Shown here: positions 838-31,586 of the stretch, in pieces
How the letters are laid out: each line of letters starts with the position of its first letter
Numbering within the stretch: the first letter of the stretch is position 1
Assembly: GCA_965235115.1 (NCBI GenBank)
Contig: OZ249440.1
Location: 16,926,001-16,990,000, forward strand
DNA length: 64,000 nt
Origin: Laetmonice hystrix
Taxonomy: Eukaryota
Direction of reading: 5' to 3'
Position numbers and translations under genes: made by a program
The notes under the pieces: model-generated
Told to the model about the DNA's origin: nothing
What the model saw: the letters and a program-made list of their open reading frames with translations, nothing else
Databases searched by the model: none

Positions 838-1017
838 CTTCATCTATATCAGGTGGTAAGCCTCCTACAAAGACCTTGCGTGAGTAGCGCTCGATTCGTT
901 CTATTCCTGACTGTGAGCTAGGCGACCCCCGCGATGGCGAGCTCATGTTGGGCACCGTCTGGTCGCAGCCCTCCTCCTGGTAGTGGCCGTCGTCTGCGTA
1001 CCCGAAAGGCGACTTCC
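838..1017 (-). CDS. CPEB2/3/4: CPEB2/3/4 (Orb2-type) coding exon: end of N-terminal region and start of RRM1 (180 nt, phase 1-1)
   Basis: Translates as (G)KSPFGYADDGHYQEEGCDQTVPNMSSPSRGSPSSQSGIERIERYSRKVFVGGLPPDIDE. ERYSRKVFVGGLPPDIDE is the invariant start of RRM1 in the CPEB2-4/Orb2 subfamily. Flanked by acceptor atgtgttttccag (AG at 1019-1018) and donor GAAG|gtaggt (GT at 837-836). Both boundaries match my recollection of the vertebrate CPEB4 exon GQSSLFPMEDG...DIDE. Confidence 0.97.
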
Positions 1018-3957
1018 CTGGAAAACACATAGGCATACCTGCTTCAATATAACATACACCTACCCCGCCACTCTCACAGGCCGGTGTCGCGTTCTCAAAT
1101 TTCCGAGTTCCGCGCATTGATTCGGCGCTTGCGCGAGAGGAATACATAATACTGCTGTCATGATCAAATAAATAAATTAACAAATTGATTGATCTCATGG
1201 GGAAAGTTTTTCTACAATGGTGGAACCCTCAGAATTATCACACTGGCCCGTTATACGAACGAACCACACAAGAAGTGGCAGTGGTGCCATAGTTACCGCA
1301 CCAACCTGGGCACAGAAACCGACCAGGTCCAAGCTTCATCTACAAAATCATTTCTTCACGGGCAATGTACAGCCTAGGCATAATAACTCAACTCTCCGCA
1401 TGTACTCCAAATTAAGCTGATTTATCGGCATCGCTTATTATTCTACTCAAGGCCTGATAAAAGACTAACACAGCCATCTTCTCCACTTAACAATGGTAAC
1501 GAACACAATCAAAACGACGATGTCACAATCACGGGAACGATATTTGATAAAAGAAACCAAACTAGCACTTAAGGACAACGTGAACTTTCAAATCATCAGT
1601 TTAAACCTAAATAAGTGCAAGCCAACGAGATAGTGTATTCACTAATACGCTGTTGCACCACATTTCTCAATTATGAAAACTGCTCAGTGCTTGAAACTCA
1701 ATTTGACACAAATCCTGAGGCCACCATTATAACGGTATAAATATCTTTCTTTTTTTTTTTGAAAACAGAGGTTGTTTCTGGTTCTAACATGAAACACCCA
1801 TAAAAAGTTCTTTCTGGAGTTGTTCGCCATCAGGCACGAGTCGGGCCTATTAACCCTATGCTTCATGCCTCATTTATCTCAGGAATAATCTGCTAGAAGC
1901 GCTATGCAATCAGGCCCTCTGACACGACACACATGGGACTACTTCTGACCAAAGAACCGTTTCCAACCCTCTCCCGGAGAGCTTTCCCACTCCCGTATGT
2001 CCCAATGCTTGTTTGTTCGGCCATACTTATCACTGTCCTTAAACAAACACGAGTTTTACTTTTTCCAAAAAGCTTGATTTCTTAACGGGCTCCCTGGGTT
2101 TGATCCCCCCCCCCCCCCTCCCCCGCGCCCAACCCCCGGCCCCAGTGACGGACCTGGGCTTGGAAGGTCATAGTGTCAGGGCAATCCCCTAGGGGTCAGC
2201 AGTGGTGCTGCGGTGTGATGACCGTGTGACATGGGGCGATGCCCACGTCCCCGTGACCACGTGAGAGACAGGCGGCCGTTCTGTTATTTTGACCGTGTAA
2301 TCCCCACGTGGCGGGGGGTGGTCGTGGGGGCGGGGTTGAACTGCCCCGCCAAGTCGGCCATCTATTCCATCAAGCTGAGTCAACAATGGCGACGTGACCC
2401 GCCCTGCTGGCGACGACTACCTGCGGCACAAAACGCCGTGTTTCTCCTCGGGCAGGACGTGCAGGCAGGGCTCTGTGAGTCGGGAGAAGCAGCCAGGCCG
2501 TCAGACTTCTACACCGGTGGATTTACGGGCCCCTGCCAGCCGACCGCCTCAAGGACATGTGCTCTCACGACCATTTCAACCGGCGGCAGCAGTGGCGATG
2601 ATCTGAGGCACCACCTATGGGAACCAGTGGGAACCACCTAAAGTGGCACCACCCCGTCTATTATTAGCTCTCATAATGATCGCAGACAGGGGCGGGGGTG
2701 AGAGAGCCGATCATGAGGTTAACCACACGTCCGTTCATGTGTTCTGCTGACCACCACAGTCCGCTGCCTCCATTGAAAGTCGGTCTTTCATGGCCAATTC
2801 CGATAATCCTCAGGTCAACCTATTAACGCGGCTACGCCTATAATCATTAGTTTTAGTAAATAAAAATCCTTCCCCCCAATTACTCCACCGACATATTCGG
2901 TTAATTATATTGGTTTCTGGTCATAGTGACAGAGTCAGACTGTCACGTTTGACGTCCCATCAAGTCGCCAACTTGTCCGCGAGGCGGCGCTGTGCTGCGT
3001 GACGACACCAGACCCCGCGGATCCACGCAGCCGATCTGTCGCTGACGGCCAACTCGTGGTTAACTCTTCAGTTTCATACTCCATTATTATTTCATTACCA
3101 CGTCATCAACGGAAAACACCACCTTCACATGATCATGACTGAGAGCCTATTATTTTCTACGCTCTAAAATTTCAACAACCCAAGTTCCCAACAAGTGAAG
3201 ATAGCCACAAAAAATATACCGGCGCTCTTTTAGTCGTTATAGTTACACATCATCATTAGCGCCAAAGGCCTTCTCCTCTACCCTGCCTCTGCCTCTCTAT
3301 CTTTCTTGGTAGTAGAACTATTCTTTATCTATTTCAGCCGTTTACATATGTCTTCTGGTAACATAAAATACCACGCTATTATACCTCCTCTTTGAGAATG
3401 TCACGACGTTGCAGTATTTGTCCGTGCCTGGGTACAGTGAGCCATCAAAGCCTGGCATTGATTGGTTGTCGGTTTCGCTGCCCGCCCCCACCCCCACCCC
3501 AATTACCACTGCCTCCTGGGTCCGTCACTACAGAGGACAAACCTACATGTATACCAATGTTAACGTTCTGGGCTCTATCAATCAGAGAGTCATCGGATCA
3601 GTATACACATTCCCAGAATGTACTTAGTTCTAACGGTGATGTAGCACCGCAAACTATCAACAGCTGAGATCAAGCCTTTTGAGGCAAATTACCTGTAAGG
3701 TACCTTATGGCTCCCTTCTATTGGATAGACACACAGTGGCTAGATGACGGCGAAAATGTACAGAAGAAAAACGTACGCGTAGAAACTAAACATTGCGTTT
3801 GTGTATATTTACTTCCACCATTCCCTCTATGCTTTGTTCATCTTTTCACTGAATGACGAGCATTCTTAAATAATAGAGAAAGCTTGAGGGCCCAGCAAGG
3901 AGTGGTTGTATTTTTGGGTGAGCCTGGGTCCCGGCGGAGGCCGCCGTTGACGGGTGT

Positions 3958-7100: not shown

Positions 7101-9183
7101 CTCCTCGATCAATATTTTCTTAACCAAGCACGCAAACTTACAAAATCTCGGTCGATGAAAACTAAGGATAAAAAGGATCAAACTGGAAGTATTTTAAAAT
7201 GATGGCAGGTGTCTTTTGGGCAGAACAAGAGTAATGTCTAATTAATCAAGTGTTACAACATGAATATACAAAAACACAAAACTAAAAATGTAGCTCTATA
7301 CTTTTTACCGGAGGTTAAAATAAAAACAAGTCAGAGACACACAAGCACCCATCCTTTGTTTACAATGCCTACGGGTGAGTAAACCCAACCCTAGAATATT
7401 GAAGATCACTGGCAGTGAAAAGTGCCTAGTATTTCCAAAATTACTGAACCTTAAAATAATCACACTCAACATTCAGAAGGACTTTTTGCCATGAATCCAC
7501 CAGACTCTATCAACCGTGAGACTCCCTTCTAACCGACTTCAAACCCCCCTTTTTAAAGATGTGACAAATTTAACGAGCGCTCTTTTACTCTTGTATTGAG
7601 AATAAATGGGTCCTTTAAAAAAAAAAAAAGTTTATGCGATTGTCATCGCAGCGGCAACCACTCCGAACACGACTGAAATGCGTTTCAAAGTAATGCCACA
7701 TGATTTAGCCATTGTGTGAGGCTCTCGATTCGCCCTGCTGGTAGTGATGCCCAGACAGTGCCCCCCCCCCCCCCCCCCCCCCAGTTTGGCCGCGGAGTCC
7801 ATATATTACACGGAGCTCTACGCATGGTTGATATTTAAAATGTCTCAGCCGTACACCAAACCTCTCGAGCTACCTTGGAACCGTCCCTGATTACTTCTAC
7901 AGTCCGCCACATGCCAACACAATCCACCATCCAATTCACACCTAGATACCAACTTATCGACTGCGACTTTTTTTTCTATCTCGCTCCCTCTCTCTCTCAG
8001 TCAGTTTCCGATGTCGGTTGAGAAATTGCATTGGGGCTGAGATTCAGCAGTGTTGACTAATTGCTGAGGAGATTTTGCTAGCTAGGCCGGCCATGTCTAG
8101 GTTGCTCCGGCATGGTTTCCTTCCTCTCGGCCTTAAGGTAATTGGCTGAATTTAGTGCACAAAAATGGATGGCAAGTGCTGCCTAACAAGCAGTCATCGG
8201 CTGTGTGCTTAGCTGGCCCGTCACGTGACGGATTTGACCTTTTTGCCTTCTGGGGACATGGGTGGTCGGGCCACCGGTATAAGTTAGCTTGGTGAAGGGC
8301 AAGGGTGAATAGAGCCAGGGTAGGAGCAGGCGAAGGGGGAACTAGCCAAGTCCGGGTACCAGTAGTAACAATACGCAAGGGTTAACGACTGTAGACGGTG
8401 TAGTAGGAATCGTTTGAGTCAAGATTCCTTCAGCCTCCAGACTCGGAGCCATCTGCTGGCATTACTGGACACTACGCTACCTCCCACGTCTTGATGTATA
8501 CGAAACATATTGCAAATATTAGCGCCCCCCCCCCCCGCTTTCTTTCTCTTTACTTTTGTTGGTATTAACTGGCATAAGGCTGGTATATATGTATAAAGCC
8601 AGTCTTCTCGATCTTGACTTCCTAACATATAGGGTTTCGGTGCAAATACTGTGCCTCTCATGGAATTCAAATACTACACGACAATACAGCAGGCCAAATA
8701 ATCAAGAAATAAAAACCTATTCTGCTTAAAGGTTACAAAAGTAGGAGAAAAGCATAAAACGGATTCACTGTCTCAGCGAGACTCGTTTCACAAAGACTGA
8801 TTAACAATAGCCGAGTATTTACACAAAGATTTCCTGTCCCAAGCCCACGCTGAGGAAATATGAGGAGTAAGAAATTACAAGTGAAATTCTAGCGGACGAC
8901 CACAATGTGACGGCTTCAAGTGAAGTACACATGGAACAAAAACCAAGCTACCACCAAGAAAACAACGCCACACTTAGGTAGGTAGGTAGTGAGGTAGCTA
9001 GGTATGTAGGTTGAATGTTAGTGTTAGCAAAGGATCAAATATCACGGAAAAATAGTAATCAACCATCACGAAAGCAGCAGCAACAAGGTTTAAGGCTAAA
9101 AACTGGTGCATCACCGATATAGATAACAAAAGACAAAAAGTGACAAAATGTGAATAGATGCTGCATATAACAGTCATAAATAC

Positions 9184-9207
9184 CTCTACGTCTTCCATAC
9201 GTCCGGG
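9184..9207 (-). CDS. CPEB2/3/4: 24-nt CPEB microexon encoding (A)RTYGRRR(G)
   Basis: Minus strand reads gactaatacctctttcttctttaactcacgcag|CCCGGACGTATGGAAGACGTAGAG|gtattt. Branch-point-like CTAAT (A at -28), pyrimidine tract, CAG, 24 nt and GT donor. In phase 1 it reads xCC CGG ACG TAT GGA AGA CGT AGA G = ARTYGRRR-G, identical to the vertebrate CPEB4 microexon peptide, and splices in frame to the 1017-838 exon. Confidence 0.93.
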
Positions 9208-9509
9208 CTGCGTGAGTTAAAGAAGAAAGAGGTATTAGTCAAAGGGTCTGTCGCAGTGTAAAGGGAACAAAAGTCGGGGTTATTATTATCATTATCAAAG
9301 CCCAAAAATCAAGTTTGGTTATTATGAATGATTGTGTATATTATTTGTTTCCTAATGGAGGAGTTCTTCTCTCGGCTGAAAAGAGAAATGGAGAAAGAGG
9401 CTCATCTTTATATAGTGAGCTGAAGAAATTGCGTGTTTGGAATTAGCAGTGGACCGGGGCAGGGTAGGGTTGGCAGATCGAACTGGGTGACCGACCCGCC
9501 GGCTCCCTG

Positions 9510-31538: not shown

Positions 31539-31586
31539 CGTCAGCCTCAATACGCACCAATGGAAACGTTCCCAAACTTTGCTTAC
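31539..31586 (-). CDS. CPEB2/3/4: Probable 48-nt CPEB cassette exon (G)KQSLGTFPLVRIEAD, beginning with a 5'-splice-site sequence
   Basis: Minus strand reads ggctaatttgtgtgtgttttttcttctttccag|GTAAGCAAAG...GAGGCTGACG|gtatgt. Branch point CTAAT (A at about -27), about 25-nt U/C/GU tract, CAG, 48 nt open in phase 1-1, donor ACG|GTATGT. The final G plus CC of the microexon gives GCC (Ala) of ARTYGRRR. Size and position resemble the about 51-nt alternative exon preceding the microexon in vertebrate CPEB2-4, but peptide similarity is weak. Confidence 0.7.

What the first reader, a model, noticed from the sequence alone, without database searches (positions are those of the whole stretch)
9184..9207. 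The vertebrate neuronal CPEB4 microexon (ARTYGRRR) in a divergent, apparently invertebrate CPEB gene
Seen: a 24-nt exon with branch point, pyrimidine tract and canonical sites, invisible to the ORF track, 8166 nt upstream of the RRM1 exon and 22331 nt downstream of the 48-nt exon. Established: the 24-nt microexon of vertebrate CPEB4 encodes ARTYGRRR, is neuron-enriched, modulates CPEB4 condensates, and reduced inclusion is associated with idiopathic autism. Inference: the peptide matches at all 8 positions while neighbouring residues have diverged strongly, which implies deep conservation; automated annotation could easily miss it.
Basis: partly seen in the sequence, partly recalled or inferred. 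Interest (0 to 1): 0.85.

Follow-up and report, generated by a model that had tools for sequence, protein, structure and literature searches.

The report
Ancient CPEB microexon in a polychaete worm
A 24-base mini-exon encoding ARTYGRRR, the same eight amino acids as the autism-linked neuronal microexon of human CPEB4, sits intact and under selection in the single CPEB2-4-type gene of a polychaete worm, so the exon probably dates back to the first bilaterian animals, although gene models of some other invertebrates already include it.

Summary
On the minus strand, 9184-9207 reads cag|CCCGGACGTATGGAAGACGTAGAG|gtattt. The degenerate pattern occurs once in the window and once in the whole 627-Mb genome.

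The host is the only CPEB2-4/Orb2-type gene of an invertebrate. The mitochondrial code and ND4L hits point to an errant polychaete (Phyllodocida).

Three related genomes carry the same 24-nt exon at the same intron position: ARTYGRRR, ARFYGRRR and ARPFGRKR. Nucleotide changes are mostly synonymous, while the flanking introns are no more alike than shuffled sequence. It is therefore a coding exon under purifying selection.

Public gene models already hold the octapeptide A-R-x-Y-G-R-R-R in octopus (isoforms with and without it), Lingula, spiders, a horseshoe crab and an acorn worm. Deep conservation is therefore real, but the novelty is modest. The exon is absent from the Owenia and Haliotis genes.

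No RNA data exist here, so inclusion and neural specificity remain untested.

The likely function is a switchable Arg-rich insert that creates an RRRGKS kinase site in front of RRM1. The scan had not noted this exon on other DNA.

The parts
9184..9207 (-). 24-nt phase-1/phase-1 cassette microexon encoding (A)RTYGRRR. It is the orthologue of the vertebrate CPEB2-4 8-residue alternative exon (CPEB4 me4).
   Evidence: Conserved as a coding unit in three related genomes.
9208..9252 (-). 3' splice region: CAG acceptor (9208-9210), pyrimidine tract cctctttcttcttt (9219-9232) and CTAAT branch-point candidate (9234-9238).
   Evidence: The acceptor is CAG in all four genomes. Three relatives read TGCAG, this window reads CGCAG.
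9178..9183 (-). 5' splice site gtattt, following exon-final GAG. It departs from the consensus at positions +4 to +6.
   Evidence: GAG|gtattt is identical in all four genomes although the rest of the intron is no more alike than shuffled sequence.
838..1017 (-). Next exon downstream: linker plus the start of RRM1 (G KSPFGYADDGHY...ERIERYSRKVFVGGLPPDIDE). It supplies the Ser of the RRRGKS site.
31539..31586 (-). Candidate 48-nt in-frame exon upstream (G KQSLGTFPLVRIEAD), phase 1/1, beginning GTAAG. It is not verified here. The microexon fits equally well directly behind exon 2.
Evidence: Exon 2 lies outside the window at G000:C5:17044179-17044278 and also ends in phase 1.

Best explanation
This is a genuine coding cassette microexon of the worm's single CPEB2-4/Orb2-type gene. 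It is orthologous to the 24-nt alternative exon of vertebrate CPEB2, CPEB3 and CPEB4 (CPEB4 me4) and was inherited from the bilaterian ancestor.

When spliced in, it inserts ARTYGRRR into the disordered linker just in front of RRM1. That adds four arginines and a tyrosine. Together with the first residues of the next exon it forms R-R-R-G-K-S, a site for basophilic kinases (RxRxxS type). The exon therefore acts as a splice-controlled switch for phosphorylation of the regulatory N-terminal half of the protein. By analogy with CPEB4 it may also control its self-association.

Shown here: the exon, its splice sites, its frame, its uniqueness, its selection as protein-coding sequence and its homology.

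Inferred, not shown: that it is alternatively included (about 0.7), that it is neuron-enriched and depends on the eMIC form of Srrm234 (about 0.5), and what it does biochemically.
For: Anatomy and uniqueness.

Host gene: searches give a full CPEB2-4 model of about 175 kb. It runs from an ATG exon (MGDYGFGLNS...) to the ZZ exon (...VPFRWC).

Selection:
- In L019 the RRM1 exon is 95% identical in protein (the L017 contig). The microexon is again ARTYGRRR, with 4 of 24 bases changed, all synonymous. About 0.009 is expected for that if changes fell at random.
- L027 has ARFYGRRR with 9 base changes, 6 of them synonymous.
- L018/L026 have ARPFGRKR.
- The 100-nt flanks are 0.61-0.67 identical, against 0.59 mean and 0.66 maximum for shuffled sequence.
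- CAG acceptor and GAG|gtattt donor are kept in all four genomes.

Homology:
- Octopus isoform X1 (991 aa) and X2 (983 aa) differ by exactly ARAYGRRR at the same junction.
- Other taxa carry Lingula ARPYGRRR, spiders ARSYGRRR/ARNYGRRR, Tachypleus ARGFGRRR, Ptychodera TRTYGRRR, vertebrate CPEB2 ARSYGRRR and CPEB4 ARTYGRRR.

Kinase site: G-x-S follows the octapeptide in 90 of 93 proteins. In mouse CPEB3 the alternatively spliced region next to S419/S420 is needed for PKA and CaMKII phosphorylation (PMC4767366).

Machinery: one SRRM_C (eMIC region) exon lies above Pfam's cut-off at C18:20459758-20459838.
Against: There is no transcript evidence for this species. The only public runs that hold the locus are DNA, since their contigs run straight through exon and intron.

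The closest full-length transcript of a relative (P0357, 71% identical N-terminal part) lacks the microexon and carries a different 17-residue insert.

The 3' splice site here reads CGCAG, not the UGC motif typical of SRRM4/eMIC targets (this motif is from my own knowledge). The three relatives do read UGCAG.

The worm's N-terminal exons show at most about 3 His in any 24 residues (read from the translation). Human CPEB4 has a cluster of 9 His that its microexon is reported to contact. The condensate mechanism may therefore not carry over.

The exon is absent from the whole gene in Owenia and Haliotis, so it is dispensable in some lineages.
Confidence: 0.85

Rival explanations
1. The exon is real and coding but constitutive in this annelid. 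It would be always included, with no splice switch and no neural specificity.
For: Protein-level conservation shows coding use, not alternative use. The acceptor has a good pyrimidine tract. No RNA data exist to show skipping.
Against: Octopus RefSeq models show both forms. The transcript of a relative at 71% lacks it. The donor gtattt is non-consensus and is kept in four genomes, as expected of a regulated exon. The vertebrate orthologues are cassette exons.
Confidence: 0.12
2. The octapeptide arose independently (convergence) in annelids, and is not homologous to the vertebrate exon.
For: Neural exons often evolve recurrently in the same genes (preprint 10.64898/2026.09.05.749416; PMC8797185). 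The exon is missing in Owenia and Haliotis.
Against: Length (24 nt), phase, position directly before the G-[KRQ]-S exon and the motif A-R-x-Y-G-R-R-R are the same in deuterostomes, ecdysozoans and spiralians. Repeated loss is far more economical than at least five independent gains of the same eight residues.
Confidence: 0.02
3. It is a chance open frame or a dead pseudo-exon that is never spliced in.
For: Only the lack of RNA evidence.
Against: There is one match in 627 Mb, in the right intron, strand and frame. The changes seen in three other genomes are mostly synonymous, while the introns are saturated.
Confidence: 0.01

Closest known systems
Human and vertebrate CPEB4 microexon 4 (me4, 24 nt, ARTYGRRR, residues 403-410)
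   Same: Same length and same peptide (8/8). Same place, directly upstream of the exon that begins G-x-S and ends ...ERYSRKVFVGGLPPDIDE. Same frame-preserving cassette geometry.
   Different: The host is the single pre-duplication CPEB2-4 gene of an annelid. The His cluster that me4 contacts in human CPEB4 is not evident in the worm's N-terminal exons. Neuron-specific inclusion, SRRM4 dependence and the anti-aggregation role are known only for vertebrates.
8-residue alternative exon ('B-region') of mammalian CPEB2 and CPEB3, which supplies the PKA/CaMKII consensus next to S419/S420 of CPEB3
   Same: The Arg triplet followed by G-x-S is kept: RRRGKS here, RRRGRS in CPEB2. The paper shows that peptides lacking the region are not phosphorylated (PMC4767366).
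   Different: Phosphorylation of the worm protein is untested. The residue before Ser is Lys here, where CPEB2 has Arg and CPEB4 has Gln. The paper's text is inconsistent about which label (B or C) carries the 24 nt, so I rely on its statement that the region abutting S419/S420 holds the consensus.
RefSeq isoform pair of Octopus bimaculoides CPEB3-like (XP_052828706.1, 991 aa; XP_052828707.1, 983 aa)
   Same: Another spiralian with the cassette at the same junction (…HYK|ARAYGRRR|GKSPFGF…). It is annotated both with and without the exon.
   Different: Position 3 is Ala. The animal is a mollusc, not an annelid. No publication on this isoform pair turned up in my searches.
Bilaterian-ancestral neural microexons reported so far (APBB1/2/3, 6 nt; MADD, 9 nt)
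   Same: A very short in-frame exon shared by vertebrates and protostomes in a neuronal regulator.
   Different: Those two were inferred from tissue RNA-seq as neural-specific in both clades. For the CPEB exon only genomic and gene-model conservation is shown here. It is not listed among the four mouse-fly shared exons or the two bilaterian-ancestral ones.

Membership tests
CPEB2-4 24-nt microexon (CPEB4 me4 / 8-residue alternative exon) | The host gene belongs to the CPEB2-4/Orb2 subfamily (RRM_7 plus CEBP_ZZ, conserved ERYSRKVFVGGLPPDIDE start of RRM1). | tested here: met
   The RNA-binding exons are about 76-100% identical, exon by exon, to Octopus, Lingula and nemertean CPEB2-like proteins.
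CPEB2-4 24-nt microexon (CPEB4 me4 / 8-residue alternative exon) | A 24-nt exon flanked by phase-1 introns with canonical AG/GT, whose skipping keeps the frame. | tested here: met
CPEB2-4 24-nt microexon (CPEB4 me4 / 8-residue alternative exon) | It is the last exon before the exon that begins G-[KRQ]-S and carries the start of RRM1. | tested here: met
   The junction is the same in Octopus, Lingula, spiders, Ptychodera and vertebrates.
CPEB2-4 24-nt microexon (CPEB4 me4 / 8-residue alternative exon) | Peptide motif A-R-x-Y-G-R-R-R. | tested here: met
   ARTYGRRR, 8/8 to human me4. The motif was derived from 93 proteins.
CPEB2-4 24-nt microexon (CPEB4 me4 / 8-residue alternative exon) | It creates a basophilic kinase consensus (RRRGxS) with the next exon. 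| tested here: met
   At sequence level only: RRRGKS. 90 of 93 proteins have G-x-S. Phosphorylation itself was not tested.
CPEB2-4 24-nt microexon (CPEB4 me4 / 8-residue alternative exon) | Alternative (cassette) inclusion, enriched in neurons. | not testable with these tools
   The only runs holding the locus are DNA. No RNA run is on offer for this organism.
eMIC/SRRM4-dependent neural microexon programme | UGC motif between the pyrimidine tract and the 3' splice site, and an eMIC-bearing Srrm234 gene in the genome. | tested here: inconclusive
   The window reads CGCAG, the three relatives read TGCAG. One SRRM_C exon scores 29.9 bits against a cut-off of 27. The motif rule is from my own knowledge.
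CPEB4-type condensate stabiliser (me4 contacting a His cluster) | A histidine cluster in the N-terminal disordered region as partner of the Arg-rich microexon. | tested here: not met
   By my reading of the translation, exon 1 has at most about 3 His in any 24 residues. The human cluster has 9.

The most novel reading that the evidence does not exclude
The autism-linked CPEB4 microexon would be a third bilaterian-ancestral neural microexon, more than 550 million years old, after those in APBB and MADD. Studies centred on vertebrates and insects would have missed it because Drosophila and other insects lost it. In annelids it would still be included in neurons under eMIC/Srrm234 control. Its ancestral job would be a splice-gated RxRxxS phospho-switch on CPEB2-4, with the anti-aggregation role in vertebrate CPEB4 added later.
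Probability: 0.4. Interest if true: 0.7.

Novelty: new member of a known kind. Interest (0 to 1): 0.5.

Why it matters
Mis-splicing of this 24-nt exon in human CPEB4 is tied to autism and schizophrenia, and its biochemical role is under active study.

Recent comparative work holds that vertebrate neural microexons are almost never shared with protostomes. Four exons are in equivalent positions between fly and mouse, and only two are confidently bilaterian-ancestral. CPEB is on neither list.

The exon is kept, as protein-coding sequence, in annelids, cephalopods, brachiopods, chelicerates and hemichordates. That makes it a further candidate and gives a natural series of variants (T/S/A/P/N/G/F at position 3, invariant R-x-x-G-R-[RK]-R). 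The invariant RRRGxS context points to the kinase site, rather than the vertebrate His-cluster contact, as the conserved function. The question also becomes testable in tractable invertebrates such as Platynereis-like worms and octopus.

For genome annotation, this exon cannot be found by ORF-based methods and needs homology or junction reads.

Tried and rejected
1. RNA support. The look-up of sequencing runs on the RRM1 exon gave three runs of one sample. Read laying showed their contigs crossing exon and intron, so they are DNA. The read laying cap is then spent, so expression stays untested.

2. My first pattern for the chance test had one N too many and found nothing. It was corrected.

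3. The representative search with the 59-residue RRM1 exon returned mostly exon-sized ORF fragments called on genomic contigs. It was useful for finding relatives' DNA but poor for isoforms.

4. L017 ended about 0.8 kb short of the relative's microexon. I solved this by looking up a neighbouring called ORF.

5. The MAFFT alignment of the three loci misplaced the most distant copy. I used fixed exon coordinates instead (after correcting an off-by-one error).

6. Species identification by COX1 failed. Twelve in-frame TGA codons leave pieces of at most 55 aa. ND4L has none and worked. Cluster look-ups of the unnamed ENA and Logan relatives gave no names.

7. Look-ups of the Liolophura, Lineus and Ostrea proteins found no gene on record, so their introns could not be scanned.

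8. Literature searches for an invertebrate CPEB microexon found no paper that describes it. The 2019 eMIC paper is not in the library, so I cannot exclude a mention there or in VastDB.

9. No Rfam family and no repeat explains the site.

Full report
**What is there**

The window is G000:C5:16926001-16990000 of a 627-Mb assembly in 35 pieces. The minus strand at 9184-9207 reads CCCGGACGTATGGAAGACGTAGAG. A CTAAT branch-point candidate, a 14-nt pyrimidine tract and a CAG acceptor precede it, and gtattt follows it.

The upstream exons end in phase 1 with a G. This holds for exon 2 (…CTT AAA G|gtaagt) and for the candidate 48-nt exon at 31539-31586 (…GAC G|gtatgt). The microexon is therefore read as Ala-Arg-Thr-Tyr-Gly-Arg-Arg-Arg. 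Its last G completes a Gly codon with the first two bases of the exon at 838-1017, which encodes GKSPFGYADDGHY…ERIERYSRKVFVGGLPPDIDE.

A degenerate pattern for AG + the eight codons + GT matches once in the window, against none in 100 shuffles. It matches once in the entire genome, at this site, with no match for the reversed control. No Rfam family and no repeat lies on it.

**The gene**

Pfam RRM_7 and CEBP_ZZ searches of the whole genome find two CPEB loci. One is compact, on C2. This one is on C5.

tblastn with nemertean, brachiopod, octopus and hemichordate proteins gives a complete CPEB2-4/Orb2-type model of about 175 kb on the minus strand:
- an ATG exon (MGDYGFGLNS…) at C5:~17048400-17049381;
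- exon 2 (DRGSPYDAMRFPSLESHLLDIMRTSTDPHDQLK) at C5:17044179-17044278;
- the exons inside the window;
- five RNA-binding-domain exons ending in …VPFRWC at C5:16875687.

Joining exon 2 directly to the RRM1 exon gives …DQLK-GKSPF…, as in many annotated spiralian proteins. Inserting the microexon gives …DQLK-ARTYGRRR-GKSPF…, which parallels Octopus …HYK-ARAYGRRR-GKSPF….

**The organism**

The mitochondrial contig (C35, 16.8 kb) has a COX1 with 12 in-frame TGA codons. It also has six in-frame AGA/AGG codons at positions that read as Ser in conserved motifs, and ATA where Met is expected. This is the invertebrate mitochondrial code, in which AGR is not a stop as it is in vertebrates.

ND4L has no TGA and could be searched. 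Every named hit is a phyllodocid polychaete: Eulepethus 61%, then Aphrodita, Namalycastis, Perinereis, Goniada, Glycinde and Glycera. The N-terminal exon finds a graded series of unnamed ENA assemblies (98, 76, 71, 67, 63% …). The closest named proteins come from a chiton, nemerteans, an abalone and annelids at 44-57%.

The source is thus an errant polychaete annelid. Family and species remain open.

**Is it a real exon?**

No RNA evidence could be had. The only public runs holding the locus belong to one sample, and their contigs run through exon and intron alike, so they are DNA. The case rests on comparative data, and that evidence is strong.

I fetched DNA upstream of the orthologous RRM1 exon from three related genomes in ENA assemblies.

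| Genome | RRM1 exon protein identity | Microexon sequence | Peptide | Distance upstream of RRM1 exon |
|---|---|---|---|---|
| L019 | 95% | CACGGACTTACGGAAGGCGTAGAG | ARTYGRRR | ~11 kb |
| L027 | 78% | CACGCTTTTACGGGAGAAGAAGAG | ARFYGRRR | 2.5 kb |
| L018 (and L026, second contig of the same sample) | 75% | CCAGGCCATTTGGACGCAAACGAG | ARPFGRKR | 1.4 kb |

- Against L019, 4 of 24 bases differ and all four are synonymous. About 0.009 is expected for that if changes fell at random, since 21 of the 69 possible single changes are synonymous.
- Against L027, 9 bases differ. Six are synonymous and the other three fall in the single variable codon.
- The 100 nt on either side are only 0.61-0.67 identical, against a shuffled baseline of 0.59 mean and 0.66 maximum.
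- All four copies keep CAG| and GAG|gtattt.

This pattern is that of a translated exon. The kept non-consensus donor fits regulated inclusion.

**Homology and depth**

Human me4 is ARTYGRRR, residues 403-410 (PMC11417990). A region-restricted search with the octopus protein returned 120 CPEB2-4 proteins. At the same junction they carry:

| Taxon | Octapeptide |
|---|---|
| Vertebrate CPEB2 | ARSYGRRR |
| Vertebrate CPEB4 | ARTYGRRR |
| Ptychodera | TRTYGRRR |
| Lingula | ARPYGRRR |
| Octopus | ARAYGRRR |
| Spiders | ARSYGRRR / ARNYGRRR |
| Tachypleus | ARGFGRRR |
| Nemerteans (a looser form) | [GN]RGYGKRQ |

Octopus bimaculoides and O. sinensis RefSeq isoforms X1 (991 aa) and X2 (983 aa) differ by exactly these eight residues. 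The spider Trichonephila clavipes protein named "translational regulator orb2" also has the octapeptide.

The exon is therefore present in deuterostomes, ecdysozoans and spiralians, with the same length, phase and position. Common descent from the bilaterian ancestor is by far the simplest reading.

Retention is patchy. The complete gene DNA of the annelid Owenia fusiformis (44-kb intron) and of the abalone Haliotis rubra (2.4-kb intron) holds nothing like it. Many annotated bivalve and gastropod proteins lack it. A transcript of a relative with 71% N-terminal identity lacks it and has another 17-residue insert at the junction.

The 8/8 identity with CPEB4 is partly luck, because position 3 is free. 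The linker that follows shares only about a third of its residues with a vertebrate CPEB4, and needs gaps to align, until the invariant ER-x-ERYSRKVFVGGLPPDIDE.

**How it probably works**

The insert adds four Arg and one Tyr to the disordered region just before RRM1. With the next exon it forms RRRGKS.

In 90 of 93 proteins with the octapeptide the next residues are G-x-S. In mouse CPEB3 the alternatively spliced region abutting S419/S420 is required for phosphorylation by PKA and CaMKII, and its inclusion rises after neuronal stimulation (PMC4767366). I therefore rate a splice-gated kinase site as the conserved function. This is an inference from sequence.

The second known role is stabilisation of CPEB4 condensates, in which me4 arginines engage a histidine cluster. 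It is less likely to be ancestral, since the worm's N-terminal exons show no such cluster.

On regulation, the genome has one SRRM_C (eMIC region) exon above Pfam's cut-off (…RRKGSPSHLDRRRIT). Three relatives have TGCAG at the acceptor, but this window has CGCAG. eMIC dependence is plausible but open.

**Novelty**

My literature searches found no description of this exon outside vertebrates.
- Torres-Méndez et al. [quoted passage not shown]
- A 2026 preprint infers only two bilaterian-ancestral neural exons, in APBB1/2/3 and MADD.

The exon is nevertheless already in RefSeq models of several invertebrates. What is new is this annelid member and the explicit statement of bilaterian depth. It is not a new kind of element.

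I rate it a new member of a known kind, interest 0.5.

The earlier scan note on the 48-nt exon (s1-317201) concerns a neighbouring feature. I confirmed only that this exon is in frame and begins GTAAG. The scan had not recorded this microexon on other DNA.

Noticed in passing
window 31539-31586 (-): Candidate 48-nt in-frame exon (G KQSLGTFPLVRIEAD) that begins GTAAG right after its acceptor. A transcript of a relative (P0357) has an unrelated 17-residue insert (GNNWIFNGPHDGRISGK) at the same junction, so this position seems to host variable exons. The 48-nt exon itself is unverified.
   Followed up: partly
G000:C18:20459758-20459838 (-) = L020:1501-1581: Single genomic match to Pfam SRRM_C (eMIC region of Srrm234), 29.9 bits against a cut-off of 27. 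It reads …RSPSIRRRKGSPSHLDRRRIT and ends at a splice donor. It probably encodes the microexon-enhancing domain of this worm.
   Followed up: partly
G000:C35 (16,826 bp; L021, L024, L025): Mitochondrial genome. The ORF that ends one base before COX1 looks like ND2, and that ORF, COX1 and ND4L all lie on the + strand. COX1 has 12 TGA (Trp) codons and 6 AGR (Ser) codons. The ND4L best hits are phyllodocid polychaetes at no more than 61% identity, so the family may lack a public mitogenome.
   Followed up: partly
G000:C2:12394600-12396580 (+): Second, compact CPEB gene (RRM_7 67 bits, CEBP_ZZ 87 bits within 2 kb), presumably the CPEB1/Orb-type paralogue. There is one in-frame TGA in the RRM match, most likely an intron.
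   Followed up: no
window 1107-1140 and 635: A cluster of seven substitutions and one 1-nt insertion in the intron just upstream of the RRM1 exon, seen in the contigs of runs X1 and X2 but not X3 (same sample). It is probably the second haplotype. The exon 838-1017 itself shows no difference.
   Followed up: no
G000:C5:16898445-16898600 (intron, minus strand): Long CAG/AGC-type microsatellite that translates as poly-Ser or poly-Gln and gave spurious tblastn hits to low-complexity parts of CPEB proteins.
   Followed up: no
L022 (Owenia fusiformis CAIIXF020000005.1) and L023 (Haliotis rubra QXJH01000345.1): The whole CPEB2-like genes of a basal annelid and an abalone contain no [RK]-x-[YF]-G-[RK]-[RK]-[RKQ] frame on the gene strand, so the microexon was lost there. 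Owenia's linker exon is also strongly diverged (no GKSPF start, YSKKVF instead of YSRKVF).
   Followed up: yes
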